A DNA stretch of 64,000 nt, taken from Ginglymostoma cirratum (Eukaryota). The notes beneath the pieces were generated by a model. It saw nothing but the letters and a program-made list of their open reading frames with translations, ran no database searches and was not told where the DNA came from. The DNA lies in NCBI GenBank assembly GCA_024137785.1, contig JAHRHZ010000002.1:5928008-5992007 (forward strand). The letters run 5' to 3'. Positions 27,887-56,618 of this stretch are shown in pieces. The position numbers were made by a program, and so were the translations under genes. Within the stretch, counting starts at the first letter, position 1. Each line of letters starts with the position of its first letter.

Positions 27887-27959
27887 ATGGCAAGAGGATC
27901 CCACGGCGTGTTGCTGTCACTTGTACTGAGTTTCTACCGAGTACAACAATGCCTGACCG
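27887..27959 (+). CDS. MHC class I-like heavy chain, exon 1 (signal peptide)
   Basis: gaaATGG Kozak context; MARGSHGVLLSLVLSFYRVQQCLT followed by G|GTGAGT; 73 nt, phase 1, matching the alpha1 exon. Too short for the ORF track. Confidence 0.8.
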
Positions 27960-28304
27960 GTGAGTACCCCTTATTGTGTTTGCAAGAGACTGTGCGCTCG
28001 CCGCTTCTGACCGGAGACTGTATTGGCATGCAGGTTTCACCAGGTCTTTTATAAAAGGGGATGGAGTTGTAAAGTTATGAAACCTGTCCTGTTTGTTGCT
28101 TTGTTTGTATTTGTCGCTGGCCGTCTGTTGCCTCTCAGCTGTCGCCTTCCACTGACCAAAGTAAACATGCTGCCTCCATTACCAGAGGTCAGAAAAGTCA
28201 AGACCGACTCCGTTGGTTCCTAAATGTAAGCCGTGACAGCATTGCGCCTTCCGGACCTGTCGGTGCTCCGTGGACAAGAAAAAGTGGACAACTTGCATTC
28301 ATCT

Positions 28305-28467
28305 TAGATAACAAGCATGGGGCTGGATGAACACAGCAGGCCAAGCAGCATCATAGGAGCAGGAAAACTTGACGTTTCGGGCCTAGACCCTTCATTTCTG
28401 ATGTTCATCCAGCCCCATGCTTGTTATCTCGGATTCTCCAGCATCTGCAGTACCTTTTATCTCTGAT
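28305..28467. mobile_element. Partly palindromic Penelope mini-element (family C) in MHC intron 1
   Basis: agataacaagcatggggctggatgaaca ... tgttcatccagccccatgcttgttatct; 17-bp TSD acaacttgcattcatct at 28288-28304 and 28468-28484. Confidence 0.85.
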
Positions 28468-28604
28468 ACAACTTGCATTCATCTAGCGCCTTTCGCGACG
28501 TCAGGGCGTCCTGAAGAACGTTACAGTTCGCTCTCGACTCTCTTCACCCGGAACCAACCGCTCCCCAGCGTCCACATGTACTTCGCTCAAAACATTTGCA
28601 AGCG

Positions 28605-29015
28605 TAGAGTTATGCATACATAACAGCATGGAAACAGACCCTTTGGCCCAACCAGTTCACGCCGACGGTGCTCCCAAACTGCCTGTACTTGGCCCGTATC
28701 CCTCCCAACATTTCTTATTCATGTGCTAATCTAAATGTCTCTTAAACGTGGTAACTGTAACGGCATCCACCACTTCCTCTGGAAGTTCATTCCACACAGG
28801 AATCATACTGTGTGAAAAAAATTGCCACTTTTTTTTACATCTTTGTCCTCTCACCTTTAAAAATATGCCCCTTAGTCTTGAAATCCCTCAACCTAGTGAA
28901 AAGACACCTGCCGTTCACCTTATGTATACCCTGCATGATTTTATATACCTCATTAAGGTCACCTCTAGACCTCCTACACTCCAGTGAAGTTCCAGCCTCT
29001 CCCCACAACTCCAAA
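28605..29015 (-). mobile_element. CR1 3' fragment
   Basis: Minus-strand ECRRSRGDLNEVYKIMQGIHKVN...TKGHIFK. Confidence 0.8.
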
Positions 29016-29660
29016 GCCTTTAAAGCAGATCTGTAGCTTGACTTGCGGTTGGAGTTGTTGGTTGGTTCACTGAGCTGACTGGTTTTCATGCAAACATTTC
29101 ATCTCCCTTCTAGCTAACATTGTTGGTGCTGCGTCGCCTTCTTTGAAGTGCTGTTGTTCTGTTGCGCTCTTATTGCAGCCACTAAGTCTTAGACTTAGTC
29201 TCTTGTAGATTTACGCACTCACTGTGTTACTCTTGTCTCTGTCTCTGGGTGTGCGAAACTACTTTTTTTCTCACTGTCTCATTCACACTCAATGGTCATC
29301 TGGTCTCTGCCTCTTGCCATGCCAGTCTCCTCAGAAGGCCTCAGAAGATTCTGAGAGATTCTAAGAGGGACATCTACTTTTTTGGATGGTTTTCTGGAAC
29401 TTTCTGTAGTTCTGGCCAATTGGGGAGATACACTTAATAGTTTGAAACAGAGGCAATCTTTTGGATGGCATGGTACTGTCAATTTCTTTGTGTAGCAGGA
29501 CCTGGTGCCTGGGTCGTCCTTTTATTTGGTGGTTAAGTTGCCTTTTATATTATGCTAATGTCATCAGTACCTGGCTGCTGTGTTTGCACTGTGATTGGTG
29601 TGTGGGTTTTGTGATTTCAGTGTTTTACTTGGCCAATATACCCAGCATCTCTTACTGTTT

Positions 29661-30770
29661 CCTCAACCGAGGATTCCCCAGCTCCATTTTCGACAGGGGC
29701 CTCAACCAGGTTCGACCCATCTCCTGCACTTCCGCCCTCACCCCTTCTCTTCCCTCCAGCAACAGCGATAGGGTTCCCCTTAACCTCACCAGCATCCACA
29801 TCCAGAATATTTTCAGATGCCATTTCCGCCACCTCCAGCAAGAACCCACAACCAGACACATATTCACCTCCCCTCCCTTGTCCCCTTTCTACAGGGACTG
29901 TTCCCTCTGGGACTCCATGGTCCACACTTCGTTCTCCCCCAACACCTCCCCACAGCCCTACGGCACCTTCCCCTGTAACCGGCGAAGGTGCAACACCTGC
30001 CCATTCACCTCCTCCCTCCCCAGTATCCAAGGGCCCAAACATACCTTCCAGGTGAAGCAACACTTCACCTGCACTTCCCAGAATCTAGTCTACTGCATTT
30101 GCTGCTCACAATGTGGTGTCCTCTACACTGTGGAAACGAAGTGTAGACTTGGCGACCGCTTTGCAGACCATCTACGTTCTGCTTGCAAGAAAAACTCTGA
30201 ACTACCAGTTGCCTGCCACTTCAATGCATCACCCTGCTCCTGGCCAACATCTCTGTCTCTGGCTTGCTGCAGTGCTCCAGTGAAGCCCAACGCAAGCTGG
30301 AAGAACAGCACCTCATTTTCCGCTTGGGGACCCTACAGCCCTCCGGACTCAATATTAAGTTCAATAAAAATTTAGGGCCTAAACTCTCCCATGTCCCAGC
30401 CCCCCACCCCATACACCAGGCCTTGTTACTACATAGCCTGCCATTACACACCCCCTGTTGTTAATCACTAACAGTCCCCATTAACAAATACACACCCTCC
30501 CAGCCTGATCGTTAGCAGCTCATTTGTCTGTCCTACTGTCTTTCTCTCTCTTTGGGCTCTATCCTATCGTTTACTCCTTCCTCACCCACCTCCCAATTTT
30601 CTGCACATAAACTGACATCTTCCCAGCCACCATCAGTTCTGAGGAAGGATCACCGGACCCGAAACATTAACTCTGTTTTCTCTTTGACAGATGCTGCCAG
30701 ACCTGCTGAGCTTTTCCAGCAACTTTGTTTTTGTTCCTGATTTACAGCATCCGCAGTTCTTTTGGTTTTT
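29661..30770 (+). mobile_element. 5'-truncated Penelope-like element (family A): GIY-YIG and terminal repeat
   Basis: NLVYCICCSQCGVLYTVETKCRLGDRFADHLRS; hammerhead core 30639-30668; 14-bp TSD atctcttactgttt at 29647-29660 and 30771-30784. Confidence 0.9.
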
Positions 30771-30949
30771 ATCTCTTACTGTTTGGCGAGGTTAGTAATC
30801 TGTCTGCATTTTAATAGCCAGGAGGCTGCTACAAGTGGTACTTTATTTAAGCACTACAGGCAAAAAGGCTGAATTGCCTCTTTCTGTTCTGTAACTTTTT
30901 TCTGGTTCTATTGTTCCAACAATTATGAAGTAATACAAGGGAAGCTCAA

Positions 30950-32900
30950 AGCCAAATACGTTTAACTGGAGGAGGGCTAATCAGTCACCTTAGAAAATGA
31001 TCTGGTCTGGAATCACAAGATACTTAGGGTCAAGTTAATTAAGCATAAGAAAACCTGCGGGCATCTAAAGTTACATCTCCTTGGATAACTAAGCATGCCA
31101 AGGTGATGTTAAACCAAAAAAGGTCTTTATGATAAATGTTATATCTACAACTGAGCTGTAAATAACCTGAATGTAGATCACTTAAAAAGAAGGTAACAAT
31201 GATAGAATATGTATGTCAGAAATTAAAATAATAGGGAATCAAGACGTTTTTCAAAAAATCTAGAAATGGCAAAAGGGAAATATGCTTGTTTAACTGGAGG
31301 GAATGGCCAGAGTATTAAGTGAACTCTTTTGCATTTGTCTTCACTTAAAAGACACACTACCAATTTAAAGGAAAGAAAGACGAAGCAAAGTTATTTGGTG
31401 GAATTGTAATCAGTAACAAGGTTGCAATCAATACCTCAAAATTTCATAAAATGCAATACTATATCTGCTCTGGTTTGGATGCAGCATATGTTACTGAGGG
31501 ATGTAAGGGTAACATCCTCGAGGATTATACAAGCCTTTTTAGGTATGGGAGGGTTGCCAGAAGTATGAATGTTAACCTTTTGTTCAAGACGAGCTGGTGG
31601 TTGGAGTGGGGCAGAGTATTGAATAGATAAATCTAGCAACTGTAGGCTTCTCAGCCTAACTTCTGTTTAGAAAAACTCTTGGAGATCTTAAGCCATTAAA
31701 AATTAGACTTGAAGAAGGGTGGAGCAATTGATGAAAACTGTAGGGAATTGTTAAAGGCAAATCATGTTTGACTGGCTTGATGAATATTTGTTGCAAGCTT
31801 GCTAAAGATTGGTTCATATTGTTCACAGTGGGTTCATGTACTTTAAAAAGGTGGTTGAAAGAACGCTATAATAGACTTGCTAGGAATATTTAAACCCATG
31901 GAATTATAGAGACATGGAAGAATGGATGCAAAATTGGCTTAGGATAATAAAGTAGGTGGGAGGACACTCTCTTCAACTTGATACAAAGTCTAAAGTACTT
32001 TCCCGACCAGTCAGTATTAGGACAGGCTATTTTTGACATATTAATAAACTCCGTCTGTGTATCAGAGCATTATTTGCAGGTGACATAATCTAGAAATATA
32101 GTAAACAAAGAATGCAACAGGAGCGCACAAGTGAAATAGAAAGACATATTGTTGCTGACATTTGAGATTTGGGAATGATGTTTTTGTCAGGAAAGTTGTA
32201 GATATGTATATAGACTACAAATTACACTTTTAAAGGTTTGCAGGAACACAGGGAGCTGCGTTGCATGTGATGTGGGGAAATCTGTCAAAGTGGCAAGATA
32301 ATTTGAGATAACAAGCATGGGGCTGGATGAACACAGCAGGTCAAGCAGCATCATAGGAGCAGGAAAACTTGACGTTTCGGGCCTAAACCCTTCATCAGAA
32401 ATGGGGGAGGGGAAGAGGGTTCTGAAATAAATAGGGAGAGAGGGGGAGGCGGATAGAGGATGGATAGAGGAGAGGATAGGTGGAGAGGAGGCAGACAAGT
32501 TGAAGAGGCGGGGATGGAGCCAGTAAAGGTGAGTGTAGGTAGGGGGGTAGGGAGGAGATAGGTCAGTCCAGGGAGGACGGACAGGTCAAGGGGGCGGGAT
32601 CACTGTTTATGAAAAATGTTTATTGATTTCATGGCTCTATTATTATTAATAGTAGGGTGCAAACACCAAAAGGTTATGCTGAAACTTTACAAACAATTGA
32701 TTTGTGCTCAAATGGAATTGTGTTCAATTCTGGCTACCAGGTTTGGCCAAGAAATGTGTCAAGGAAGCAGAAGAACCGCTCCAGAGATGGAGGGTTTTGG
32801 TTAAATGAGTGACTAGAGAAGATGTGCCTATTCTCTCTGATTGAAAAAGTTCAAGAAGACATAGGTGCAGACAACCATAGACTTTAAAAGAATAAGTCAG
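30950..32900 (+). mobile_element. Highly decayed CR1 ORF2 remnant, interrupted by a Penelope terminal repeat at 32307-32600
   Basis: Scattered CR1 motifs (aaaggcaaatcatgtttgact; gttatgctgaaactttacaaa; gtgttcaattctgg). Confidence 0.5.
32307..32600 (-). mobile_element. Penelope family C terminal repeat with a hammerhead core
   Basis: Near-identical to 54677-54965; minus strand CTGATGA-A-GGGT-TTAG-GCCC-GAAACGTC at 32371-32398. Confidence 0.85.
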
Positions 32901-33849
32901 AAAAGTAATTTACTCAAAGTCAATAAATTTGCCAAAATAAAAAGTGAAATTAATCAAATATTTTGTTATATGTTGGGATGTACCTTCGCTAGTGTTTCAG
33001 TCTGTGTCTCAGTTTCTTACTAGTTTTAAATTACACTGCAGTGTATTGTTTACTAATCTAGTTTTGCCCACAGCTAATCCTGGGATTAGAGGTCTGGCAG
33101 TCTGGTGGAAATTTTACTTTTGTAGGTTAGCAAAAAGATTGGACCATTTTTTCAAGTTAAATGAGTTGAAATCCCAATATGGTAGCTGAGAAATTTAAAA
33201 TCCATTCATGATCAAATATGGAATGGGAATCCATTGTTTTAAATGGACACCATGCCACTACCAGATGTGGTGAAAACCTATTTGGTTCATTAGTCAGCTT
33301 TGAGGAAGGTTGGCATACCTTTTCAGTCTCGTGGAAAACTATGACTTGGAAAGAATTTAAACTTAATCAAAATAAAATTGAGTTGAAGCAAGCAAAACAC
33401 AACTCTGATTTGGGATTATTTGACTGACCTTTCATTGTTGCTGTGTCATTCTCTGGGAACTGTCTTGCTTACAGCATTGTGGGAGTTCATACACTTGAAA
33501 GATTGCTGTGGTTTAAGAAGGCAGCTCACTGCCACCTTCTCAGGCCAATTCGTGTTGAGCAGTAAGTGCTGGTCTGAGCAATGGATGATCAAATAAAGAT
33601 AGCCAACGGATACTTACCCACCAGTTTTCTGCTGAGTGTGGAGAGTGGCAACTAGTCACAAAAGATTGATGGTGGGATGGATTTCGTGGTGCAGTTTGTA
33701 AGTTGTCTGACTTGGTTTAGAAGTCAGGGAACCCAAAAAAATGATTTTGGTACTTGTTAGTTGATTCCCAATGCCATTTTAATGATGGGAGACTGGTTGA
33801 AAAACTACCAAACCATGATTTCAAGTAAAACAATGAATGAGTCTTAGAG

Positions 33850-34410
33850 AGACTCATTGGGTCATACTTCATTGAAGGAGGCCCTTTGGCCCACCATGTT
33901 CTTGCTGACCAAGAAACACCAACCTACACTAATCCCATTTGTCTGCACTTGGTCCTTAGCCTACTGTGCCCTGAAATTTTAAGTGCTCAGCCAGATGCTT
34001 CTTAATGGTGAGAGTAATTGCCTCCACCACCCTCTCTGGCATTATGCTCTTTATTTATCACCCTCTGGGTGAAAAATCTTTCAATCTGGTGTCCTTTAAA
34101 TCACTTTCTCCTCACCTTAAACTGATGCCCTCTGGTCTTAGATATGCCCACCGTGGTGACAAATTCTCCTGATCAAATCTGACTATGCCTCTCATATTTT
34201 TTTAATATCTTAATCAGCTTCACCCCTTCACCCTTCCTCCCTGATTCTCCTCTGCTCCTAGAAAACAAACTCATCCCATCTCTCCTCATAACTGAGAACT
34301 TTCATTCCAGGTTACATGTTGTTGAATGTCCCCAGCACACTCTCTGGTGCAATCACATCTTTGATGGTGCGATCACCAGAACTGCACATAGTATTCTGTT
34401 TGTGGCCTAT
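33850..34410 (-). mobile_element. Old CR1 3' fragment
   Basis: ccaccctctgggtgaaaaa...cctcaccttaaactgatgccctctggt...accagaactgcacatagtattc. Confidence 0.6.
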
Positions 34411-35409
34411 TTGTTGTTAATAAAGTTGAAACCATCTTTTAACTTCTCAATTGTGAATGAGGTGTTGAATTATACCGGGAAGAAAGGCACCGAGTTTCAT
34501 TTCTGGTGGGAGTTGATCGAGGTGACTTAATTTTGTGAGCTTATTCTCGCATGACTACATTTCCCTACCCCTCTAGTCCAGGGAACCAGGAAAAATAATA
34601 CATCAGAATTTCCATTGCTGATCATTGGTAAGTTAAGTGGTGAAAAGTTTTTGTGCTCAGGGAATGCTTGAGCTCAATATTTCTCTCTTGTTCTGAAGAG
34701 ACTGCAACCCATTAGTTTTCTAGATTATGTAGGAAATAACTGTATTGAGATATTTGGTTATTCATTTGAAAGAGTGATTTGTGTTGTAATGGAAATCTCT
34801 GGGCAGGATTATTTGTCAACTGAACCAAGTAGAAAATAATCAGGATGCAGTTCCCACATTTACATTTATCTCCAATGGTGTCCTTGAGTGTCAATGACAG
34901 GCATCAAAACTTTGATCTATTTTGTCCTCCCCATACATATGCCTAAATCATTGATGTCAAATTTGTGTCAGAGGTAGCAAGTAATTGGCCGTATCCAGCA
35001 AGATAGATGCTACCCATCTCACCTTTGACATTCAATGGCATCACCATTGTTGAGCCTCCAATTATCAATAGCCCAAACATTACTATGAACCAGGAATGCA
35101 CCTGAATTAACTGCAGATACGATGGCTATAACAACAGGTTAGATGCTTGGCATTCTGTGGTAGAAGCACACTGCCTGCCTACAAATGCCTTTCTAACATC
35201 CACAAGGCATACAAGAAGAGTGTGGTGGAATGCTCTGCATTTGCCTGGATGAGTCTAGCTCCAGTAGAAGCTGGACATCATCCAGGATACAGTTTCTCAC
35301 TTGATTGGCACTACATCCACCACCTTTAAACATAAATTCCTTCAATCATAAATGTATAGTGGCAGTGGTGTGAACATTTACAAATCTCATGACAGCAACT
35401 CATCAAGAC

Positions 35410-36410
35410 AGAGAGTGGTGGTAGAAGGTTGCTTTTCAGACTGGAAGCCTGTCACCAGTGGTGTTCCACAGGGATTGATTCTGGATCCTGTTTGTTTGTC
35501 ATTGCTATAAATAATTTGTATGACAATATCAAAGGCACGGTTTGCAAGTTTGCGGACGGAACCAAATTTGGTGAAATAGTGGATAGTGAAGAAGGTTTTC
35601 TAAGATTACAAAGGAATCCTGATAAAATGGTTCAATAAGCTGAAAAATGGGAGATGGAGTTCAATTTGGATGAATGCAAGATATTGCATTTTTGTGGAAC
35701 AAACAAGGACAGGACCTATACAATTAATGGTAGACTCTTGGGTAGTGTTGTAGAACAGAGGGACATAGAGGCTCAGGTATGTACTGTTTTGAAATTTGTG
35801 TCACATATAGACAAGGTGGCTGGAAAGGCGTTTAGCATGCCTGCCTTCATTGCTCAGTCCTTTGAGTACTGGAGTTGGGAAGTCAAGTTGATATTGCACA
35901 GGACATCGGTGAGGCCTCATCTGGGGTACTGTGTCCAGTACTGCAATAGGACAGATATTATTAGGCTGGAAAGGGTAAAAAAGAGATTTATCAGGATGTG
36001 GTTGGGAAGGAAAGGTATCAATTATAAAGACAGGCTGGATAGATTTTTTTCACTGGAGTGTAGAAAGTTGAGAGGTGACATTATAGATGTTTATAAATCA
36101 TGAGGGGTATTGATACGTTAATAGTAGGTGTCTTTTCTGTATGATGGGGGATTTCAAGACTGGGGGTATATTTTTAAGGTGAGAGGAGAGCGATTTTAAA
36201 AAAAGGACACGAGGGGCAAAATTTTTACATAGAGGGTGTTTTGCATGTGGAATGAACTTCTTGAGGAAGTGGTGGATGTGGGCACAGTTACAATGTTTAA
36301 AAGATACTGCCAAGCACAGGTAGGTAGGACTAGTTCAGTTTGAGATTATGTTCGGCATCAACTGATTGGACCAAAAGATCTGTTTCTGCGCTGTGTGCCT
36401 CTAAGATTCT
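35410..36410 (+). mobile_element. CR1 RT C-terminus and 3'UTR
   Basis: KFADGTK; MEFNLDECKILHF; VRPHLGYCVQ; RKLRGDIIDVYK. Confidence 0.85.
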
Positions 36411-36972: not shown

Positions 36973-37233
36973 AGTCTCATTCTCTGCTATATCAGTACAC
37001 CTTCAATCATGGGATAGCTGATTTACCAATGTATAGTATCCTGGGGATTTTGGATGGCTGCGAGATATACTATTTTGACAGCAATATGAAAATAACTGTT
37101 CCAAGGCAACAATGGATGGCGGAAGCATTTGACAAGAATTACTGGGAACGGTGCACTATGACTGAAGCTGGCTTTCATGGAATCATTAAGGGACAGGCTG
37201 ATGAATGGCTCCAGAAAGAAAACCAAACATCAA
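36973..37233 (+). CDS. MHC class I-like heavy chain, exon 2 (alpha1)
   Basis: tcttctAG| ... |GTGAGT; 261 nt, phase 1/1. (E)SHSLLYQYT...LDGCEIYYFDS...VPRQQWM...NYWERCT...KENQTS, with the conserved NQT glycan site. Confidence 0.93.
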
Positions 37234-42414: not shown

Positions 42415-42690
42415 GTACCCACTACCTGCAAGGACTGTTTGGCTGTAAGCTACATGATGCCAATCCGAGTGAAGGGATTTTGAAGTTTGCTCTTGATGGC
42501 AGATACATATTCAGTTTTAATAAAGATACATTGGTTTGGAATATACACAATAAGTTCGCAAAAGAGTTCAAAGTGAAATGGGATAAGGAAACAAAGATGA
42601 ACCGTTATTTCAAGAACCTGTTAGAAAATGACTGTACAGATCTATTGAAGACGTACTATTCAATTGGAAATGCCTCTTTAAGCAGAAAAA
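42415..42690 (+). CDS. MHC class I-like heavy chain, exon 3 (alpha2)
   Basis: ttttAG| ... A|GTAAGT; 276 nt. (S)THYLQGLFGCKL...FALDGRYIFSFNKDTLVW...KVKWD...LLENDCTDLLKTYY; the canonical Cys pair is present. Confidence 0.95.
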
Positions 42691-42894: not shown

Positions 42895-43161
42895 CTCCCC
42901 CTGAGGTCTCAATTATTGCCAAGGGTGGCAGTCATTGTTTTCTACACTGCATTGTGATTGGATTTTACCCACAGCCCATCAACGTGACCTGGTTGAAGAA
43001 TGGAAAACCTGTCCATGAGACAAACTCTACTGGGTTATTGCCCAATGAAGATGGGACGTTCCAACTAAAGACAACCCTCCAATTTGACCCATATGATGGC
43101 AACCAATATGCCTGTCATATTGAGCACAGCAGCTTCCCAGGTGGAAAGACTGTCCTTTGGG
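42895..43161 (+). CDS. MHC class I-like heavy chain, exon 4 (alpha3, C1-set Ig)
   Basis: atacAG| ... G|GTAAGC; 267 nt. LHCIVIGFYPQPINVTWLKNG...LLPNEDGTFQLK...YACHIEHSS. Confidence 0.95.
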
Positions 43162-46718: not shown

Positions 46719-46780
46719 AGGTTATAGTCCAACAGGTTTATTTGAAAACACTTTCAAATAAATCTGTTGGACTATAGCCT
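46719..46780. repeat. 29-bp inverted repeat with a 4-nt loop
   Basis: aggttatagtccaacaggtttatttgaaa-acac-tttcaaataaatctgttggactatagcct. Confidence 0.85.
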
Positions 46781-48979
46781 ACTGCAGTCAGACAAAGCAT
46801 TAGTGAGGCCAAACCTGGGCTTTGCATGCAATTTTGGTCTCCCTACCTATGAAAGGATATACTTGCCATAGAGAGAATGCACTGGAAATTTACTAAGCTG
46901 ATACTGGGGAATGACAGGACTACCATTGATGATTTGACTAGGCATGTAGAATAAAGAATGAGAGGAGATCTGATTGAAAACATAAAATTCTAACAGGCCT
47001 GAAAAGACTGGATAAGGTGAGGATATTTACTCTGGTTGGAGAGTTTCAAACCAAGGGACATGATCTGAGGATAAAGGGTACACCATTTCGGACTGATTTG
47101 AGGAAACACTTCTTCACTCAAAGGGACCTGAACCTGTGGAATCCTCCACTACAAAAGGCTGTGGAGACCAGTCACTGAATATACTCAATAAAGAAATAGA
47201 GACATTTTCAGATTTCGAAAGGGTCAAGGGGTTTGGGAAGAAAGCAGGAATATGGCAGAGAAACAGGCATGTTCACATTAAAGAGTGGAATATGCTGAAA
47301 GAGTTCAATGATATATTCCTGCACATAGTGCGTAGTATCCAGGGCACAGGAGAAACCACATTTTGAATACTGCACATTGACTAGTCATGTTATTTAAGAA
47401 TGTAAATGGATTGGTGGTAGTTGAAAGAAGGTTTCCCTGACCAACATCTGGAATAAGTCCAAATAAATGCAAAATACCGTGGATACTTCAAGTCTAAAAT
47501 ATAAATATTAACTGCTGGAGAAACTCAGCAGTTCTACCGGAATCTGTGGAAAGAGTAAGAATGTTAACTTTGAGTCAAGTGGCTCTTCTTTAGAACTGAA
47601 CTGATTTTTTGTGTATGTTGATAAAAGTGGGCAAAGAAGAAAGTCGAACAGATGGTAAGGGTGCTTGGATCAAAAGACAAGGTGAGTGCTTATAGTGGTA
47701 AAGGAGGGATTAAAATGCAAAATAGACATTGTATAGGAGAAAATAAGTTTGCACTTCTGAGTCAAATCCAACAAGACACTACAGGGGGCATGGGGTTGGG
47801 TGATGTGATCAAAATGAAGGACAGTGTTTATGCTCTGAAGTTATTGAACTCAATTTGAATCCTGAATGCTGTAAAATGCCTGAGTGTAGAATAAAATGCT
47901 GCCCCTCCAGCTCACATTGAGTTTCAATGGAACAAAGCAGGCCTCTGATTGAAATGTTATCTTGGGAGCAAGATCATTTATTGATTTGATTGATTTCTCC
48001 ACCAATGCTGTGAGTTTAGAAGAGTCTCTTTATCATTTCTGTTTTCATGTCTGGAAATAAATGGAATGTCTCATTGAGATCGGTTGGACAGAGTAGTCTC
48101 GTATCTTTTTTGTACGTTAAAAGAGTAAGTGATGATGTGATTGCAACATATAAGGTCCTGTCGGATCATGATAAGTTTGATTTGGAGCATATGCTCCCTC
48201 TTATGGGGGAATTGAGATCTAGAGCTCACTGTCTTAAAAATAAGGCATCAACAATTTAACATGAGGTATGTTATTTTTCTCGTGGATGGTCACAAGTGTT
48301 TGCTATTCTCTTCCTGAAAAGGTAGTGGGAACAGAGTCCTTTGAATATTTTTAAGGCAGGGATGGTTAGATTCTTGTTCAGCCAGGGACAGAAAAGTTAT
48401 CATGCTGAGCGAATATGTGGATTTGACATTGCAGTCAGATAAGCTATGATCTTGTTTAGCAGTGAAGAAGGTTCAAGTGACTGACATACTGCTGCACCTT
48501 GTTGATAAGTTCTGATTCAACAAGCAGATTCTGTCATCTGTTGGCCTTCTCTCACGCACTGTGAACATTTCAGAGTTTGCAGAGTTGTGCCCATTGCACA
48601 GAGAAGTGCATGTAATTCACCTTGTATTATCCCATCATTGAATTGAGAAGCTTTTTCTGACCGATAAAATTGTATCTACTCCTCCATTTCTATGTCTCTT
48701 CATTTGTTGCTTCCCCTGTCTTTTTATTTCTTTTTCCTCTTCTGGCCTTATCCTCCCCCTCCTCTTCTTTTAATTTCTACCCTCAGACTTATTCTCCCTT
48801 CCCCCCCCGGTCCTTGTTTCTAAGTGCAGTAATAAATTGTGTACTTCATGTCATGGGAATATAAATCATATTAAACATCACCATTACTTGAGCAATGTTA
48901 TGACGATATGATTATGATGTATATCATTGTCCTTCCATTCAAAATTTTGTAATCAAAAGTGCTATTTAATATTTTTCAG

Positions 48980-49084
48980 AAGGAAAATTGAAGAACAGCT
49001 ATAATGTGGGGATGATTGTCTTGGGTATACTGGCGTCACTGGCAATTATTCTTATCATATTTATATGGTGGAGAAGACAAAGAG
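48980..49084 (+). CDS. MHC class I-like heavy chain, exon 5 (connecting peptide and transmembrane segment)
   Basis: atttttcAG|; (E)GKLKNSYNVGMIVLGILASLAIILIIFIWWRRQR. Donor is either G|GTGGCA (49084) or G|GCAAGT (49087); both are phase 1. Confidence 0.85.
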
Positions 49085-49187
49085 GTGGCAAGTTTTTCTT
49101 TAATGTATCACAGAGCAATTTTGCAAAAAATATTTTCTCACCCACGCGCATGATTATGCTTGATTTTACAACATTCGGATATGGTAG

Positions 49188-49495
49188 TGACGGTGGCTCA
49201 GTGGTTAGCACTGCTGCCTCACAGTACCAGGGGCCAGGGTTCAATTCTGTCCTCTGTGCAAACTCCACACAGACAGTTGCTATTCTCCCTGTGTCTGCGT
49301 GGGTTTCCTCTGGCTGCTCTGGTTCCCTCCCACAGTCCAAAGATGTGTAGGCTAGGTGGATTGGCCATGCTAAATTGCCCGTAGTGTTCAGGGATGTGTA
49401 GATTAGGGGGATGGGTCTGGATGGGATGCTTGAGTTCAGTGTGGACTTGGGTTGAACGGCCTGTTTCCACACTGTAGGGATTCTATGATCTATGA
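49188..49495 (+). mobile_element. HE1-like SINE
   Basis: cggtggctcagtggttagcactgctgcctcacag; ggttcaattc; tail gggattctatgatctatg. Confidence 0.85.
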
Positions 49496-49693
49496 ATTGG
49501 CCCTGGGTTTCTATTGCATCATAACTGCTGTTTTCTCAAGGAAAGGTTTTCTAATGAAAGTTTGTTTCATCAAAATTAAACTAGAAAAGTCAAAGAAACG
49601 ATAGACTGTAATCAAAAAAGACTTGATACAAAGTAAGTTGGAACACCATAGGAAGTTTGTGCTGAGTCATCTTTAGTTATTCAAGGTAACATA

Positions 49694-50160
49694 CAATGCA
49701 CGGCTGAGGATCCTAATATACGATGAACGGCTGAGGATCCTGGGATTGTATTCGTTAGAGTTTAGAAGGTTGAGGGGAGATCTAATAGAAACTTACAAGA
49801 TAATGCATGGCTTAGAAAGGGTGGACGCTGGGAAGTTGTTTCCGTTAGGTGGGGATACTAGGACCCGTGGGCACAGCCTTAGAATTAGAGGGGGTCAATT
49901 TAGAACGGAAATGAGGAGACATTTCTTCAGCCAGAGAGTGGTGGGCCTGTGGAATTCATTGCCATGGACCGCAGTGGAGGCCAGGACGTTAAATGTCTTC
50001 AAGGCAGAGATTGATAAGTTCTTGATCTCGCAAGGAATCAAGGGCTATGGGGGGAGTGAGGGTAAGTGGAGTTGAAATGCTCATCAGCCACGATTAAATG
50101 GCAGAGTGGACTCAATGAGCCGAATGGCCTTACTTCCACTCCTATGTCTTATGGTCTTAT
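49694..50160 (+). mobile_element. Young CR1 3' end, same subfamily as 8985-13483
   Basis: Near-identical to 13030-13483; flanked by the direct repeat ggtaacata (49685-49693 and 50161-50169); short 5' duplication of cggctgaggatcct. Confidence 0.9.
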
Positions 50161-51566
50161 GGTAACATATGGACACACAAGTTTTTGGTAAATGCAAACA
50201 AGTGTCAGATGGAATTCAATGCAGAGAAGTGTGAAGTTATATATTTTGGTACTAAGAATGAGAAGTGGTAATAAAACAAAGGCAGAATTCTAGAAAGGGT
50301 AAGGTAAACAGGAAACCTGGGATATATGTGCACCAACCTTTGAATGTTATCGTGCGGGTTGAAACAAAAAACAAAACAGGTATTGTGCACTAGAAATTGA
50401 AGTGCAGGGGAAATAAACAAGGAATTTGTGAGGAAATTTTATCAAGACAAAGATTTGATTTCAAGACAGAATTGTGTCCTGTTATACGCACCTTTTTTCT
50501 TCTTGGAGGAAAACTTCACGGAGGCTACAGAAAGGTTTGTGAGCATGTTTCCAGCAATGATTAAGTTCTCTTATGTTACCTGAAAAAAAGCAGGATTGTT
50601 CTACTTGGAAGTTTCTATATAGAGAAGTAACTGGATAGCAGTGATTGAAATAATGCTTTGCCTAGACAGAGACTGATAGGAAGAAACTGCTCCAATGGTG
50701 GATGGGTTGTAAATCAATGATCACTATGAGGCTAATTAATGGCAAAAGAGCCAACAACAACATGAGGATACCTTTCCACTTTATAGGATTTGGAATGCAT
50801 CAGCTGACAGTGTGGTGTGAGGCAGATTCAATTGTGACTTTCAAAAGGGCCTATGGATATGCAGCTTCAGAGAAAACATTATCAAGAAAGGACAGGAAAG
50901 TATGACCAGATGAGTTCCTCTCAGAGGGCTAGCCTCCTTAAGTGCTGTGACCATTTAATTATTTTATAAACCTATACAACTGTAACCTAAATTTCAAGAT
51001 TGCAGTCTGAGCTAGTGAAAAATCTGCCACAGGCTTACCTCTGACGCATGAGGACATCAATCTGTACTGGTGAATAAATCTGACTTGTAAATCGAGATAT
51101 TCAACCCATAATTCTGCCCATTGTGACAACATGTTGATCTTAGAATGGAACCAAGGTTTGGGTCACTGAACCCTGAACGCTGTTGATTTGAAGCCAGGTC
51201 AATGTCGGCCAGTGATCATTAAGCCTCAAGTAAGATTGAAATGAATCAATGATATTCTAGCTGTATGCCAGTTTCTGATTGAATCTTCGTTCTTCTGGCT
51301 TTGCTGTTCAGTTTGAATAACTTTCTTCAGCATGGCATAAACAGTCCCACAAAAGCAATACATTGTCATCTGCTGACAGCTAAAGTGACAGTCTTGTATG
51401 AGGAATGTATTAAGGTATCTCTGATACAATCCCGCTTGCTGCACGAACGACAAATGCAGTTGTATGTGTTTCGTGATCAATGCACAATATCATGAAATGG
51501 AATATAATAACATGGAATTGGACCATAGGTATAAAAAAAGTTTAAAATTTGATGGAAATTACAAAT

Positions 51567-52250
51567 TCATAGTCCTACATCGTGGAAACAGGCCCTTTTG
51601 GCCCAACTTGTCCATGCTGACCAGCTTTCCCACACTGAACTAGTCCCATTTGCCTGTAAAAACCAAAAGAACTGCGGATGCTGTAAATCAGGAAGAAAAA
51701 CAAAGTTGCTGGAAAAGCTGAACTGGTCTGGCAACATCTGTGGAGGAGAAAACAGTTAACGTTTCGGGTCCGGTGACCCTTCCTCAGACCCTTCCTGTTC
51801 TGAGGAAGGGTCACTAGACCCGAAACGTTAACTCTGTTTTCTCCTCCACAGATGCTGCCAGACCTGTTCAGCTTTTTCAGCAACATTGTTTTTGTTCCCA
51901 TTTGCCTGTGTTTGGCCCATATCCCTCAAAATCTTTCTTATCCATGTACCTGTTTAAATGTCCTTTTAATTGGACCCACATCTACCACTCCTCTGGCAGT
52001 TTGTTCAACATACACACCACCCTCTGTGCAGAAAAGTTTGCACGTCAGGACCTTTTTAAATCTTCCCTCCTCTCACCTTAAACCTATGTCCTCTAGTTTT
52101 AGACTCCCCTACCCTGGGGAAAAGACTTTTTGCTAATCACCTTATCTGTGTCCCTCATGATTTTATAAACCTCTACAAGGTCACCCCTCTCTCCCGGGTG
52201 AAAAACGTCCCAGCCTATTCGAACCTCCCCTCATCATTAAACCTTCCAGT
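51567..52250 (-). mobile_element. CR1 3' fragment carrying a palindromic insertion
   Basis: Reverse-complement CR1 tail, continuous across the insertion at 51658-51895. Confidence 0.8.
51658..51895. mobile_element. Palindromic Penelope mini-element with two back-to-back hammerhead cores
   Basis: Minus-strand core 51758-51787 and plus-strand core 51800-51829; inverted arms of ~95 bp; 14-bp TSD tcccatttgcctgt at 51644-51657 and 51896-51909. Confidence 0.9.
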
Positions 52251-52414
52251 CTCAGTTAGATCCTTGAAAATCATTTTTTGCATTTGAAAGCGTGAACCTT
52301 TTTGATCTACTTTTTCAATACCATATTCTTGGCAACTTGGTGATTCCCAGGGACTCGCTGCTCTTGGCCTCTGCTCTGAGGCTCCACAGTAAATAAGTAT
52401 TCTGATTTCTTCAG

Positions 52415-54676
52415 ACCTCAGACCAGTGGGTTCCGTGCAGCCCTCCGCTCCCTCTGCTCCAATCCCAACCTCACCATAAAACCCGCGGACAAGGGAGGCG
52501 CAGTCGTAGTATGGCGCACTGACCTCTACATTGCTGAGGCCAGGCGCCAACACTCTGACGCCTCCTCCTACCGCCCCCGGATCATGACCCCACCCCTGAG
52601 CACCAAACCATCATTTGCCAAACCATCCACAACTTCATCACCTCAGGTGACCTCCCACCCACCGCCTCCAACCTCATCGTTCCCCAACCCCGCACTGCCC
52701 GCTTCTATCTCCTCCCCAAAATCCACAAACCTGAATGCCCTGGTCGACCCATTGTCTCCGCCTGCTCCTGCCCCACCGAACTCATCTCCACCTACCGAGA
52801 CTCCATTTTCACCCCTTTGGTCCAGGAACTCCCTACCGACGTCCGTGACACCACCCACGCCCTCCACCTCCTCCAGAACTTCCAATTCCCAGGTCCCCAA
52901 CACCTCATTTTTACTATGGACGTCCAGTCCCTATATACCTGTATTCCCCATGCTGATGGCCTAAAGGCCCTCCGCTTCTTCCTGTCCCGCAGAACAGACC
53001 AATCCCCCTCCACCGACGCCCTCATCCGCCTAGCCGAACTCGTCCTCACCCTCAATAACTTTTCTTTCAATTCCTCCCACTTCCTACAGACAAAGGGGGT
53101 GGCCATGGGTACCCGCATGGGCCCAAGCTATGCCTGCCTCTTTGTAGGTTATGTGGAACAATCCCTCTTCCAGACCTACACTGGCCCTAAACCACACCTC
53201 TTCCTCCGTTACATTGATGACTGCATCGGTGCCGCCTCGTGCTCCCACGAGGAGCTCGAACAGTTCATCCACTTCACCAACACATTCCACCCCAACCTGA
53301 AGTTCACCTGGACCATCTCCAACACTTCTCTCTCCTTCCTGGACCTCTGTCTCCATCTCGGGCAACCACCTAGAGACAGATGTCCATTTCAAGCCCACTG
53401 ACTCCCACAGCTACCTGGAATACACCTCCTCCCACCCACCCTCCTGCAAAAATGCCATCCCCTATTCCCAATTCCTTCGCCTCCGCCGCATCTGCTCCCA
53501 GGATGAGACATTCCAATCCCGCACATCTCAAATGTCCTCATTCTTCAAGGACCGCAACTTCCCCCCCCACAGTGGTCGAGAACGCCCTCGACCGTGTCTC
53601 CCGCATTTCCCGGAACACATCTCTCACGCCCCGTCCCCGCAACAATAACCAAAAAAGAATCTCCCTCGTCCTCACGTACCACCCCACCAACCTCCGGATC
53701 CAACGCATCAGCCTCCGACACTTCCGCCATCTGCAGTCAGACCCCACCACCAAAGACATCTTTCCCTCCCCACCCTTATCTGCCTTCCGGAGGGACCACT
53801 CCCTCCGCGACTCCCTTGTCCGCTCCACACTCCCCTCCAGCCCCACCACACCCGGCACTTTTCCTTGTAACCGCAGGAAGTGCTACACCTGCCCCCACAC
53901 CTCCTCCCTCACCCCAATCCCAGGCCCCAAGAAGACTTTCCACATCAAGCAGAGGTTCACCTGCACATCTGCCAATGTGGTATGCTGTATCCGTTGTGGC
54001 TTCCTCTACATCGGGGAAACCAAGCGGAGGCTTGGGGACCACTTTGCANNNNNNNNNNNNNNNNNNNNNNNNNNNNNNNNNNNNNNNNNNNNNNNNNNNN
54101 NNNNNNNNNNNNNNNNNNNNNNNNNNNNNNNNNNNNNNNNNNNNNNNNTATCTGCCTTCCGGAGGGACCACTCCCTCCGCGACTCCCTTGTCCGCTCCAC
54201 ACTCCCCTCCAGCCCCACCACGCCTGGCACTTTTCCTTGTAACCGCAGGAAGTGCTACACCTGCCCCCACACCTCCTCCCTCACCCCAATCCCAGGCCCC
54301 AAGAAGACTTTCCACATCAAGCAGAGGTTCACCTGCACATCTGCCAATGTGGTATGCTGTATCCGTTGTGGCTTCCTCTACATCGGGGAAACCAAGCGGA
54401 GGCTTGGGGACCACTTTGCAGAACACCTGCGCTCAGTTCACAACAAACAACTGCACCTCCCAGTTGCGAACCATTTCAACTCCCCCTCCCATTCCTCAGA
54501 TGACATGTCTATCCTTGGCCTCCTACAATGCCAGTGATGCCACCCGAAGGCTGCAGGAACAGCAAATCATATTCAGCCTGGGAACCCTGCAGCCCAATGG
54601 CATCAATGTGGATTTCACAAGCTTCAAAATCTCCCCTCCCCCAACCGCATCCCAAAACCAGCCCAGCTCATCTCCA
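52415..54676 (+). mobile_element. Penelope-like element (family C), RT and GIY-YIG, frameshifted; spans the assembly gap
   Basis: FTMDVQSLYTCIPH, GVAMGTRMGPSYA, FLRYIDD, FLDL; NVVCCIRCGFLYIGETKRRLGDHFAEH. Confidence 0.92.
54049..54148. other. Assembly gap (100 N)
   Basis: Run of N; 53777-54048 is repeated at 54149-54420. Confidence 0.98.
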
Positions 54677-55640
54677 AGATAACAAGCATGGGGCTGGATG
54701 AACACAGCAGGTCAAGCAGCATCATAGGAGCAGGAAAACTTGACGTTTCGGGCCTAAACCCTTCATCAGAAATGGGGGAGGGGAAGAGGGTTCTGAAATA
54801 AATAGGGAGAGAGGGGGAGGCGGATAGAGGATGGATAGGATAGAGGAGAGGATAGGTGGAGAGGAGGCAGACAAGTCAAAGAGGCGGGGATGGAGCCAGT
54901 AAAGGTGAGTGTAGGGAGGGGATAGGTCAGTCCAGGGAGGACGGACAGGTCAAGGGGGCGGGATGATGTTAGTGGATTGGAGATGGGGGTGTGGCTTGAG
55001 GTGAGAGGGAAAACAGGTTAGGGAGGTGGAGATGAGCTGGGCTGGTTTTGGGATGCGGTTGGGGGAGGGGAGATTTTGAAGCTTGTGAAATCCACATTGA
55101 TGCCATTGGGCTGCAGGGTTCCCAGGCTGAATATGATTTGCTGTTCCTGCAGCCTTCGGGTGGCATCACTGTGGCATTGTAGGAGGCCAAGGATGGACAT
55201 GTCATCTGAGGAATGGGAGGGGGAGTTGAAATGGTTCGCGACTGGGAGGTGCAGTTGTTTGTTGCGAACTGAGCGCAGGTGTTCTGCAAAGCGGTCCCCA
55301 AGCCTCCGCTTGGTTTCCCCGATGTAGAGGAAGCCACAACGGGTACAGCGGATGCAGTATACCACATTGGCAGATGTGCAGGTGAACCTCTGCCTGATGT
55401 GGAATGTCTTCTTGGGGCCTGGGATTGGGGTGAGGGAGGAGGTGTGGGGGCAGGTGTAGCACTTCCTGCGGTTACAAGGAAAAGTGCCGGGTGTGGTGGG
55501 GCTGGAGGGGAGTGTGGCGCGGACAAGGGAGTCGCGGAGGGAGTGGTCCCTCCGGAAGGCAGATAAGGGTGGGGAGGGAAAGATGTCTTTGGTGGTGGGG
55601 TCTGACTGTAGATGGCGGAAGTGTCGGAGGATGATGCGTT
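54677..55640 (-). mobile_element. Inverted Penelope family C copy (GIY-YIG and terminal repeat)
   Basis: ORF 55018-55659(-): NVVYCIRCTRCGFLYIGETKRRLGDRFAEH; hammerhead core at 54742-54769(-). Confidence 0.9.
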
Positions 55641-55644
55641 GGAG

Positions 55645-56044
55645 CTCCACCTCCCTCACCGGTTTTTCCTCTCACCCCAAGCCACACCCCCATCTCCTAT
55701 CTACTAACATCATCCCGCCCCCTTGACCTGTCCGTCCTCCCTGGACTGACCTATCTCCTCCCTTCCCCCCCTACCTACACTCACCTTTACTGGCTCCATC
55801 CCCGCCTCTTCGACTTGTCTGCCTCCTCTCCACCTATCCTCTCCTCTATCCACCTTCTATCCGCCTCCCCCTCTCTCCCTATTTATTTCAGAACCGTCTT
55901 CCCCTCCCCCGTTTCTGATGAAGGGTTTAGGCCCGAAACGTCGAGTTTTCCTGCTCCTATGATGCTGCTTGACCTGCTGTGTTCATCCAGCCCCATGCTT
56001 GTTATCTCGGATTCTCCAGCATCTGCAGTACCTTTTTATCTCTG
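55645..56044 (+). mobile_element. Penelope family C terminal repeat, plus strand
   Basis: Reverse complement of 54677-55030; ends gattctccagcatctgcagtacctttttatctctg. Confidence 0.88.
55915..55942 (+). ncRNA. Minimal hammerhead ribozyme motif (Penelope family C)
   Basis: CTGATGA-A-GGGT-TTAG-GCCC-GAAAC-GTC; palindromic ACGT stem III and GUC cleavage triplet. Confidence 0.75.
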
Positions 56045-56601
56045 ATTCCTACAGGATTGACTGGATGGCTATGAGCTGCACCCCTCTGCTTCATACTCCC
56101 TCAGGTTTTAACTTCTCAGCCCAAGACCTACCGCCAGTGTACTCTCGTGTTGCAGAGTTGCCCGTGGCAGTCTTTTCCCCTCCCAGAATTTTTCTTTGAA
56201 TACATTTCCCTGCAATGGTTACAATAATGAGCTCTCCTTATTGGAATTTAAAGATATGACCGGTAGGAAGTGACAGGTTGTAGTCAAATATTCACAAACG
56301 ATGTATCATTCAAATTGCTCTTAAGCAGTGTTCGCTGTTCTTGATCTCCGATGTCCTGTCAATGACAGTGACTGGCTCACTCTCCCAAAGATGCATGAGA
56401 CCAAATAAGAATATGAAAATTGTGAAAATTTAATTTTGGCAGGTGTTGAGGTGTTGGGAAATGGTCTTACAAAAGTCGCACTCTTGTAGCTAAAGTGTGG
56501 GGAACCATTGTGAAAAGAGAATGAATACGTTGCCTCATTTACTACACTATGCTCTTCATTGTTTTTTCTGGATCTTCTAACATTTATTTTCCGTTCTCTA
56601 G

Positions 56602-56618
56602 GTTACAGTGTTATTTAA
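56602..56618 (+). CDS. MHC class I-like heavy chain, putative last coding exon (cytoplasmic tail GYSVI*)
   Basis: Strong acceptor: branch-like ttctaac, polypyrimidine tract, ttctctAG|. Phase 1 gives (G)YSVI-TAA; followed by AT-rich UTR-like sequence with ATTAAA 56753 and AATAAA 57148. Confidence 0.65.

What the first reader, a model, noticed from the sequence alone, without database searches (positions are those of the whole stretch)
27887..56618. Non-classical MHC class I gene predicted to end in a CD1-like tyrosine sorting tail
Six phase-compatible exons (73+261+276+267+105+17 nt) give a ~332-aa heavy chain whose predicted cytoplasmic tail is only RRQRG(G)YSVI*. A basic stop-transfer run followed by a terminal YxxPhi motif is the design of mammalian CD1b/c/d tails, which bind AP-2/AP-3 and route the molecule to endosomes (established). 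Inference: this shark class I molecule may sample endosomal, possibly non-peptide, ligands. Several non-classical lineages are already named in cartilaginous fish (e.g. UBA-UEA), so it may belong to a known one; I cannot assign the lineage by eye. The leader and tail exons are invisible to the ORF track.
Basis: partly seen in the sequence, partly recalled or inferred. Interest (0 to 1): 0.78.

Follow-up and report, generated by a model that had tools for sequence, protein, structure and literature searches.

The report
Shark class I gene, CD1-style tail
This is a real, expressed shark MHC class I-like gene whose very short cytoplasmic tail ends in a tyrosine sorting motif of the kind that sends mammalian CD1 to endosomes, but the protein itself is already known because its outer part has a solved structure.

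Summary
The six-exon model is correct. Exons alpha1, alpha2 and alpha3 are each 100% identical to PDB chain 9CH4_A, and that chain's residues 1, 88 and 180 equal the three split codons. Contigs from 3 runs of 3 studies join the end of the TM exon directly to 56602 (checked). The tail is therefore RRQRGYSVI-stop, with the donor at 49084; the GG form was not seen. The last exon runs to about 57170, just past an AATAAA signal. The N gap lies inside the last intron, within a retroelement, and touches no coding frame.

Orthologues were found in 19 elasmobranch species. At least one isoform in 17 of the 19 keeps a basic run followed by Y-x-x-I/V. In 11 of 13 sharks it sits at the very C-terminus; in 6 of 6 batoids it reads YQNI, YQTI, YENI or YESI and is followed by nine more residues. 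None of 28 other class I-like proteins has such an ending.

Published CD1b/c/d tails have the same design. Two papers mention CD1-like, lipid-binding shark lineages called UFA and UGA as unpublished work. This gene is probably one of them, but I could not confirm the name. Trafficking is inferred, not shown. This is a correct rediscovery with an added conservation result.

The parts
27887..27959 (+). Exon 1, coding part: start codon and leader (24 codons plus 1 base). The start of the 5' UTR was not determined.
   Evidence: ATG at 27887 and donor GT at 27960. The leader matches zebra shark P0155 at 24 of 24 residues and whale shark P0166 at 23 of 24.
36973..37233 (+). Exon 2, alpha1 domain (261 nt)
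   Evidence: 86 of 86 residues identical to 9CH4_A residues 2-87. Pfam MHC_I positions 2-87. AG/GT splice sites.
42415..42690 (+). Exon 3, alpha2 domain (276 nt)
   Evidence: 91 of 91 residues identical to 9CH4_A residues 89-179. Pfam MHC_I positions 92-178, E 7e-14.
42895..43161 (+). Exon 4, alpha3 Ig C1-set domain (267 nt)
   Evidence: 88 of 88 residues identical to 9CH4_A residues 181-268. Pfam C1-set, E 1.3e-19.
48980..49084 (+). Exon 5: connecting peptide, transmembrane helix and the basic stop-transfer run RRQR (105 nt)
   Evidence: 29 of 34 residues identical to the zebra shark and whale shark orthologues. Its last 30+2 letters are found joined to exon 6 in contigs of three runs.
56602..56618 (+). 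Exon 6, coding part (17 nt): completes the Gly codon, then Y-S-V-I and the stop. This is the YxxPhi motif.
   Evidence: Spliced contigs in X1, X2 and X6. Orthologue tails are GYNVI, DYSVV, DYNIV and similar. The acceptor ranks 18 of 921.
56619..57170 (+). 3' UTR of exon 6. AATAAA stands at 57148-57153, and the contigs end at 57159 and 57170.
   Evidence: Contig pieces run 56600-56986 (X1), 56600-57159 (X2) and 56600-57170 (X6). PolyA RNA reads of X12 lie on 56487-57142. The signal was read. The end coordinate is approximate.
54049..54148 (.). Assembly gap (N) inside intron 5, within a Penelope-like retroelement copy. It is flanked by a 272-nt duplication (53777-54048 and 54149-54420).
   Evidence: RVT_1 and GIY-YIG domains in the flanking ORFs. 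The gap was not filled and not looked up.

Best explanation
The locus is the single copy, in this orectolobiform shark, of an elasmobranch-wide nonclassical MHC class I gene. The same protein's ectodomain is PDB 9CH4. It is probably the 'CD1-like' UFA or UGA lineage mentioned in print.

The gene makes a type I membrane heavy chain of 332 aa from six exons. The last exon adds only G-Y-S-V-I. The nine-residue cytoplasmic tail RRQRGYSVI therefore carries a (G)YxxPhi signal five residues after the membrane and at the free C-terminus.

Shown here: the exon structure, the splice junction in RNA-derived contigs, identity to the solved ectodomain, and conservation of the tyrosine motif in sharks and batoids.

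Inferred: the motif is read by the mu subunits of clathrin adaptors. AP-2 would take the molecule in from the surface. AP-3 and/or AP-1 might deliver it to late endosomes or lysosomes, as for CD1b, mouse CD1d and LAMP-1. The molecule would then exchange its ligand in endosomal compartments. The literature suggests, as unpublished work, that UFA and UGA carry lipids.
For: Gene model: splice sites and phases; 100% identity to 9CH4_A, split codons included; exon 5 to 56602 junction in 3 runs from 3 studies; AATAAA and contig ends.

Orthology: (296 hits at E<=1e-3, with a sharp drop after the top three). (18 proteins at E<=1e-40 among 2108 candidates, all elasmobranch). (identity falls in step with the species tree: whale shark 0.91, zebra shark 0.88, other sharks 0.65-0.80, batoids 0.51-0.57). 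(the 21 rows form one clade at 100/100, with batoids a clade inside it). (the GPR139-like neighbour is 59% identical to the skate gene that is fused to the skate class I models).

Tail. Among 48 proteins read, 28 were flagged as having YxxPhi in the last 25 residues. One of these, P0183, is a chance match in a truncated model. By species, 17 of 19 have the motif.

An acidic residue or Gly stands just before the Tyr, and batoids have E or Q after it. This fits the (G)YxxPhi consensus and the stated preference of mu3A for acidic neighbours (PMC5297682 and PMC2133128, passages).

Control: 0 of 28 other class I-like proteins have YxxPhi within 2 residues of the C-terminus, and their median tail is 43.5 aa.

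CD1 tails in print have the same design. CD1-like, lipid-binding UFA and UGA are mentioned.
Against: No trafficking, adaptor-binding or ligand data exist here.

The whale shark isoform X2 ends YSLT, so the Phi residue is lost. Whale shark X1 and X3 end in what looks like read-through (GRQVFL). This shows that the motif can decay and that a read-through isoform is annotated in the window's closest relative.

Three sawshark models and two extra sawfish paralogues lack the motif. I could not check whether the sawshark models are mis-predicted.

I laid reads only on the acceptor side. The share of transcripts that read through the 49084 donor in this species is therefore unknown, and unspliced contigs over 56200-56629 exist in X2 and X6.

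The runs are labelled 'RNA?' by guess. The spliced form itself is the argument that they hold cDNA.

By sequence the groove domains are ordinary class I, not CD1. For the zebra shark orthologue P0155, Pfam MHC_I scores 83 bits against 29.8 for MHC_I_3, below its cut-off of 35. No CD1 chain is among the 60 best PDB hits listed for alpha1, for alpha2 or for the full orthologue.

The lineage name (UFA or UGA) is not verified.
Confidence: 0.7

Rival explanations
1. The motif serves only surface internalisation and recycling through early endosomes by AP-2, as the CD1 literature reports for some isoforms. It does not deliver the molecule to late endosomes or lysosomes.
For: Virtually all YxxPhi signals mediate internalisation, and only some add lysosomal targeting (PMC2133128, passage). 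The window's own tail has no acidic residue next to the Tyr (G before it, S after it), unlike most orthologues.
Against: A short tail with (G)YxxPhi at the very C-terminus is the layout of LAMP-1 (C-terminal GYQTI: AP-1/AP-3 direct sorting plus AP-2 internalisation; PMC5297682). Most orthologues have D or E before the Tyr, or E after it, which is the stated mu3A preference.
Confidence: 0.2
2. The conserved C-terminus has another job, such as a PDZ-domain ligand (S/T-x-Phi-COOH), a phosphotyrosine signal or ER export, and sorting by adaptors is incidental.
For: The window's ending S-V-I, and the S-V-V or S-F-V endings of bamboo and epaulette sharks, fit a class I PDZ ligand pattern (pattern recalled, not from a call; sequences).
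Against: Most sharks have N, not S or T, at that position (YNVI, YNIV, YNAV, YNTV). In all 6 batoids the motif is internal and followed by nine residues. What is conserved is the Y and the I/V three residues later. No ITIM-type residue stands two residues before the Tyr (R or K there).
Confidence: 0.07
3. The spliced YSVI form is a minor isoform. The main product reads through the 49084 donor, giving the tail RRQRGGKFFFN... (the ORF runs to 49350), or skips the TM exon to give a soluble chain.
For: Whale shark X1 and X3 are annotated with a read-through-like end. Basking shark X3 and catshark X2 are annotated without the TM exon, which is 105 nt and so keeps the frame. The donor AG|GTGGCA is weak by eye. 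Unspliced contigs exist at the acceptor in X2 and X6.
Against: The spliced contigs have the higher word depth in both of those runs (37.7 against 21.7 in X2; 69.9 against 16 in X6). X1 shows only the spliced form. 17 of 19 species have the Y-tail isoform annotated. Depths of contigs are a poor measure, as the tool itself warns.
Confidence: 0.1

Closest known systems
PDB 9CH4 chain A ('Ig-like domain-containing protein', 268 aa)
   Same: Identical over all 265 residues encoded within exons 2-4, and at the three split codons. It is the same protein's ectodomain.
   Different: The solved chain stops at the end of alpha3, so it says nothing about the TM segment or the tail.
[quoted passage not shown]
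   Same: Present in sharks and rays, one gene per shark species among the hits, a crystal structure exists, and the tail is CD1-like.
   Different: No labelled UFA or UGA sequence was available, so the name is an inference. No other class I gene lies in this 64-kb window to test linkage to UDA or UEA.
Mammalian, reptile and bird CD1 (CD1b, CD1c, CD1d)
   Same: A very short tail made of a basic run followed by YxxPhi at or near the C-terminus. The skate YQNIP/YQNIQ letters equal those of huCD1b and pigCD1d. The heavy chain has a C1-set alpha3 domain. A six-exon layout with a tiny last coding exon is, as I recall, also the CD1 layout (recalled, not checked).
   Different: The groove domains score as ordinary class I. 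The Pfam model that the alpha2 exon weakly hits, MHC_I_3, stays under its cut-off. No CD1 chain is among the 60 best PDB hits listed for alpha1 or alpha2. Orthology with CD1 is not shown.
LAMP-1, LAMP-2 and CD63 lysosomal (G)YxxPhi signals
   Same: A short tail with a Gly-Tyr-x-x-Phi motif at the extreme C-terminus (LAMP-1 C-terminal GYQTI; PMC5297682). One skate orthologue has DYQTI.
   Different: These are unrelated proteins. The likeness is one of signal design only.
RefSeq 'class I histocompatibility antigen, F10 alpha chain-like' and 'MHC class I-related gene protein-like' models of sharks and rays (for example XP_059495352.1 zebra shark, XP_048472852.1 whale shark)
   Same: Orthologues: 0.88 and 0.91 identity summed over separately compared exons, the same length (332 aa) and the same exon ends.
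   Different: They are automatic names with no functional annotation. The whale shark tail reads YSLT.

Membership tests
MHC class I heavy chain (Pfam MHC_I + C1-set) | Alpha1-alpha2 domain matching PF00129 above its cut-off | tested here: met
   Alpha1 exon 28.3 bits (exactly at the 28.3 cut-off) and alpha2 exon 52.2 bits. Full orthologues score 78-92 bits.
MHC class I heavy chain (Pfam MHC_I + C1-set) | Membrane-proximal Ig C1-set domain followed by one TM helix | tested here: met
   C1-set 70.7 bits. Exon 5 has a hydrophobic stretch of about 23 residues followed by RRQR.
Elasmobranch orthogroup of PDB 9CH4 | Sequence identity to the solved chain, and one clade with the shark and ray orthologues | tested here: met
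   100% identity. The 21 orthologue rows form a clade at 100/100 against 8 outgroup class I proteins. The window itself was compared exon by exon only.
UFA / UGA lineage | Match to a reference sequence carrying that name | not testable with these tools
   No named sequence is in any tool. The papers naming UFA and UGA give no sequence in the passages read. Supplements were closed.
UFA / UGA lineage | Single or low copy, present in sharks and rays | tested here: met
   One copy in the window. Mostly one gene per shark species; the zebra shark may have two loci, and the sawfish has three paralogues.
UFA / UGA lineage | Maps in the MHC-Ib cluster with UDA and UEA | tested here: inconclusive
   No other class I exon lies in the 64 kb. 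The only neighbour seen is a GPR139-like gene.
CD1 | Groove domains group with CD1 by sequence | tested here: not met
   MHC_I_3 scores 22.4 bits (alpha2 exon) and 19.5-29.8 bits (four orthologues), all below its cut-off of 35. MHC_I scores far higher. No CD1 chain is in the best 60 PDB hits for alpha1, alpha2 or P0155. No tree with CD1 sequences was built, because none was at hand.
CD1 | Short cytoplasmic tail with YxxPhi (the CD1b/c/d type) | tested here: met
   RRQRGYSVI compared with the tails printed in PMC5002277 Table 2.
CD1 | Binds lipids in a hydrophobic groove | not testable with these tools
   Only second-hand statements exist.
Tyrosine-based YxxPhi sorting signal | Y-x-x-bulky hydrophobic residue in a cytosolic, accessible position | tested here: met
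   Y is the 6th tail residue and Phi is the C-terminal residue. Conserved in 17 of 19 species.
Tyrosine-based YxxPhi sorting signal | Binds an adaptor mu subunit and changes localisation | not testable with these tools
   This needs a bench assay.

The most novel reading that the evidence does not exclude
The tail exon is not a look-alike but a shared inheritance. On this reading the elasmobranch gene and CD1 descend from one ancestral lipid-presenting class I gene that already had a six-exon layout and a tiny last exon encoding a basic-run plus Y-Q/E-x-I signal. Endosome-routed presentation of non-peptide ligands would then predate the split of cartilaginous and bony vertebrates, with bony fish and amphibians having lost it.
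Probability: 0.25. Interest if true: 0.8.

Novelty: already known. Interest (0 to 1): 0.42.

Why it matters
When lipid presentation of the CD1 type arose is an open question in comparative immunology. CD1 has been found only in mammals, birds and reptiles (PMC5002281), and two recent papers hint at CD1-like molecules in sharks, citing unpublished work.

This report shows that the shark gene whose ectodomain sits in the PDB is transcribed with a tail of the CD1b/c/d type. It also shows that the tyrosine motif has been kept since before sharks and rays diverged. That gives the 'CD1-like' claim a second, independent leg, trafficking design in addition to groove chemistry. It also makes the claim testable with simple tail-swap reporters.

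The result further shows that automatic gene models often miss or vary this 17-nt coding exon.

Tried and rejected
- **Papers on 9CH4, UFA or UGA.** Seven literature searches looked for a primary paper on PDB 9CH4, on UFA or UGA, or on the tail. Only the two mentions in PMC10751288 and PMC12562908 turned up. The library lacks most subscription journals, so this does not show that nothing is in print.
- **Papers not held.** The two J Immunol papers on the shark UDA/UEA and UBA lineages (PMC7002201, PMC8454915) are not held.
- **Structure.** I planned to predict the structure of the zebra shark orthologue from alignment A1 and then run a fold search, to read the 9CH4 title and compare with CD1.
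- **Relative's locus.** I planned to fetch the whale shark locus and align the tail exon DNA.
- **Paralogues.** A tblastn of each exon against the window found no second class I copy.
- **GG tail.** The form using a GC donor at 49087 is rejected. It is absent from the three spliced contigs, and the orthologues have a single residue between the basic run and the Tyr.
- **Other motifs.** ITIM and PDZ-ligand readings are rejected because they are not conserved.
- **Earlier findings.** Searching the scan's earlier findings by words returned W-category MHC notes on other pieces or nothing.
- **Groove.** I did not re-test the neighbouring note on the groove anchors.
- **Joined model.** I never built or searched the joined six-exon protein. 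Exons were searched one by one, and database orthologues (P0002, P0155 and others) served as full-length stand-ins.
Full report
**What is in the sequence.**

| Exon | Coordinates | Length (nt) |
|---|---|---|
| 1 | 27887-27959 | 73 |
| 2 | 36973-37233 | 261 |
| 3 | 42415-42690 | 276 |
| 4 | 42895-43161 | 267 |
| 5 | 48980-49084 | 105 |
| 6 (coding part) | 56602-56618 | 17 |

Every intron begins with GT and ends with AG, and every junction is in phase 1. The sum is 999 nt, which is 332 codons and a stop. Pfam finds MHC_I in exons 2 and 3 and C1-set in exon 4. A tblastn of each exon against the window finds no second copy.

**The protein is already known.** Each of the three ectodomain exons is 100% identical to PDB chain 9CH4_A: 86 of 86, 91 of 91 and 88 of 88 residues. 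An alignment of the zebra shark orthologue to that chain prints the chain in full. Its residues 1 (E), 88 (S) and 180 (T) are the three codons split by the introns (G|AG, A|GT, A|CT). The solved chain therefore confirms the exon 1/2, 2/3 and 3/4 joints to the base. The chain ends at the last residue of exon 4, so it is silent on the TM exon and the tail.

**The assembly gap.** The N run at 54049-54148 lies in the last intron, 5 kb after exon 5 and 2.4 kb before exon 6. No reading frame crosses it. The 272 nt before it recur directly after it at 99.3% identity. The two sides are thus overlapping or tandem copies rather than a plain continuation. The ORFs around it carry RVT_1 and GIY-YIG domains, which marks a Penelope-like retroelement.

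**The questioned junction.**
- One run search with exons 3-4 gave nine holders of the stretch.
- I laid X1, X2, X6 (contigs, three different studies) and X12 (2026 polyA RNA reads) on 56200-57400.
- In all three contig runs, a contig lies on 56600 onward with 30 loose letters before it.
- Those letters occur once in the window, at 49053-49082, and are followed there by AG|GT.
- AGGT stands on both sides of the joint, so the aligner starts at 56600. Only 49084|56602 gives a GT..AG intron, and the mRNA is the same wherever the cut is drawn.
- The alternative donor at 49087 would insert GTG. It is not seen.
- The X1 contig has 372 letters upstream of 56600, which is 374 with the shared AG. That equals exon 5 plus exon 4 plus 2 letters.
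- The X2 contig has 980 letters upstream, or 982 with the AG, which is the sum of exons 1-5 counted from the ATG. This is consistent with the model but unverified, since only 30 loose letters are shown.
- X2 and X6 also hold an unspliced contig over 56200-56629, at lower word depth.
- X12 gave only 14 reads (56487-57142), too few for a junction call.
- The contigs end at 56986, 57159 and 57170, and an AATAAA stands at 57148-57153. The last exon is therefore about 570 nt, of which 17 are coding.

**Was the tail exon a lucky guess?** Among 921 AG sites downstream of exon 5, the 56602 acceptor ranks 18th on a crude pyrimidine-tract score. Only two sites give a tail of 12 residues or fewer that ends in YxxPhi. 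The other one, at 61340, has a poor acceptor.

**Relatives.**
- A search of the representative library with the alpha2 exon gave 296 hits at E<=1e-3. Three stand apart at 60-71% identity, and the rest are at 40% or less.
- I then used one of those database proteins (P0002, 343 aa) as the full-length query. The word search returned 18 proteins at E<=1e-40 among 2108 candidates, all from sharks and batoids.
- Cluster listings added more species and isoforms.
- The window was compared exon by exon and the identities summed as numbers. It is 0.91 identical to the whale shark protein, 0.88 to zebra shark, 0.77-0.80 to bamboo and epaulette sharks, 0.65-0.70 to other sharks and 0.51-0.57 to batoids.
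- That gradient follows the species tree and places the window in an orectolobiform shark.
- A maximum-likelihood tree of 21 orthologue rows and 8 outgroup class I proteins (teleost, bichir, lungfish, reptile, platypus) puts the 21 in one clade at 100/100 on a long stem, with batoids a 100/100 clade. The window itself was left out of the tree because that would need the joined model.
- The next gene downstream in the window (57571-58455, minus strand) is a rhodopsin-type receptor. It is 59% identical to the skate GPR139-like protein that RefSeq fuses to the skate class I models. The neighbourhood is therefore shared as well.

**The tail across species (48 proteins read).**
- 28 were flagged as having YxxPhi in the last 25 residues. 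One of them, P0183, is a chance hit in a truncated model.
- 8 are the GPCR or fusion models that end in it.
- 12 lack the motif: three sawshark models with mutually unlike ends, five alternative isoforms (bamboo shark X1 and X2, sevengill X2, little skate X5, whale shark X1/X3), whale shark X2 (YSLT), and two extra sawfish paralogues.
- By species, 17 of 19 have a Y-tail isoform, and 18 of 19 have the Tyr.
- In 11 of 13 sharks the protein ends in basic run, one residue, Y-N/S-x-I/V. Examples are GYNVI, DYSVV, DYSFV, DYNIV, DYNVV, DYNTV, EYNAV and AYNAV.
- In 6 of 6 batoids it reads DYQTI, DYQNI, AYENI, DYESI or DYENI, followed by nine residues ending in Cys.
- As a control, 28 other class I-like hits passed my crude filter (290-420 aa with a TM segment found). 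None has YxxPhi within two residues of the C-terminus, 4 have one somewhere in the tail, and the median tail length is 43.5 residues.

**How it most likely works.**
- The tail is nine residues long, with four basic or polar stop-transfer residues, a Gly, and then Y-S-V-I at the free end.
- Printed CD1 tails, confirmed by cDNA according to the source, have the same build: huCD1b RRRSYQNIP, pigCD1d RRRVYQNIQ, moCD1d RRRSAYQDIR, ratCD1d RRRSYQDIM (PMC5002277 Table 2, passage; also YQNI, YQDI, YQGV in PMC5002281).
- That review states that the motif drives recycling from the surface to intermediate and late endosomes.
- The (G)YxxPhi consensus, its reading by AP-1, AP-2, AP-3 and AP-4, and LAMP-1's C-terminal GYQTI are in PMC5297682.
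- The preference of mu3A for acidic neighbours of the Tyr is in PMC2133128. Most orthologues have D or E before the Tyr, or E after it.
- I therefore read the tail as an adaptor-binding signal that takes the molecule from the surface into the endosomal system, possibly as far as lysosomes. This is inference from motif, position and conservation. No step of it is shown here.

[quoted passage not shown] PMC12562908 (passages) says that UFA and UGA are CD1-like, MHC-linked and single or low copy. It adds that crystal structure and mass spectrometry suggest lipids, citing a personal communication. A solved structure of exactly this protein, its distribution in sharks and rays, its low copy number and its CD1-type tail all fit that description. 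No labelled sequence was available to me, so the name stays probable.

By sequence the gene is not a CD1 family member. MHC_I outscores MHC_I_3, which stays below its cut-off. The 60 best PDB hits listed for alpha1, for alpha2 and for the whole orthologue are classical class I, MR1, HFE and ZAG chains, not CD1.

**Against my reading.**
- The whale shark, the closest relative, has lost the Phi residue and has read-through isoforms annotated.
- I did not measure read-through at the 49084 donor.
- The run types are guesses.
- Contig depths are weak measures of abundance.
- The sawshark models lack the tail, and I could not check their loci.

**Verdict.** The gene and its CD1-likeness are already known to the field through a PDB entry and two mentions in print. 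The added value here is proof of the 17-nt tail exon in this genome, and the finding that the tyrosine motif is kept across elasmobranchs and is specific to this lineage.

Noticed in passing
window 57571-58455 (-): An intronless 294-aa ORF for a rhodopsin-family receptor (7tm_1, E 1.7e-24). It is 59% identical to the little skate 'probable G-protein coupled receptor 139'. It lies tail to tail with the class I gene, about 400 nt beyond that gene's polyA site. In the skate, RefSeq fuses this gene with the class I orthologue in several models, so the two genes are neighbours in both species.
   Followed up: partly
window 52817-54537 (+) and 55018-55659 (-); also 29461-30375 (+): Penelope-like retroelement copies (RVT_1 and GIY-YIG domains) lie in introns 5 and 1. 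Two copies in intron 5 are in opposite orientation. The N gap sits inside one of them, with a 272-nt duplication on either side.
   Followed up: partly
window 9479-11841 (+) and 17698-18552 (+): LINE-type ORFs upstream of the gene: a GDSL esterase-like ORF, an endonuclease/exonuclease/phosphatase domain and a reverse transcriptase.
   Followed up: no
proteins P0166, P0169, P0170 (whale shark): The closest relative's orthologue ends in YSLT (Phi replaced by Thr). Two further isoforms end in GRQVFL, which looks like read-through of the same donor. This may be decay of the signal in one species.
   Followed up: no
proteins P0192 (basking shark X3), P0195 (catshark X2): Annotated isoforms skip the TM exon and keep the frame, ending ...VPW-DYNVV and ...VPW-DYNTV. 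These predict a soluble chain. In the window the same skip would also stay in frame, because exon 5 is 105 nt. No such contig was seen.
   Followed up: no
window 56930: An A>C difference in the 3' UTR, seen in one contig of X2 and in 4 of 4 first-mate-plus reads of X12. It is a likely polymorphism between individuals.
   Followed up: no
It lies inside intron 5 of this gene. I did not examine it.
   Followed up: no
proteins P0163, P0164 (sawfish): Two extra sawfish paralogues on the same contig as the Y-tail copy lack the tyrosine tail and sit on longer branches. This may be a batoid-specific duplication with loss of the sorting signal.
   Followed up: no
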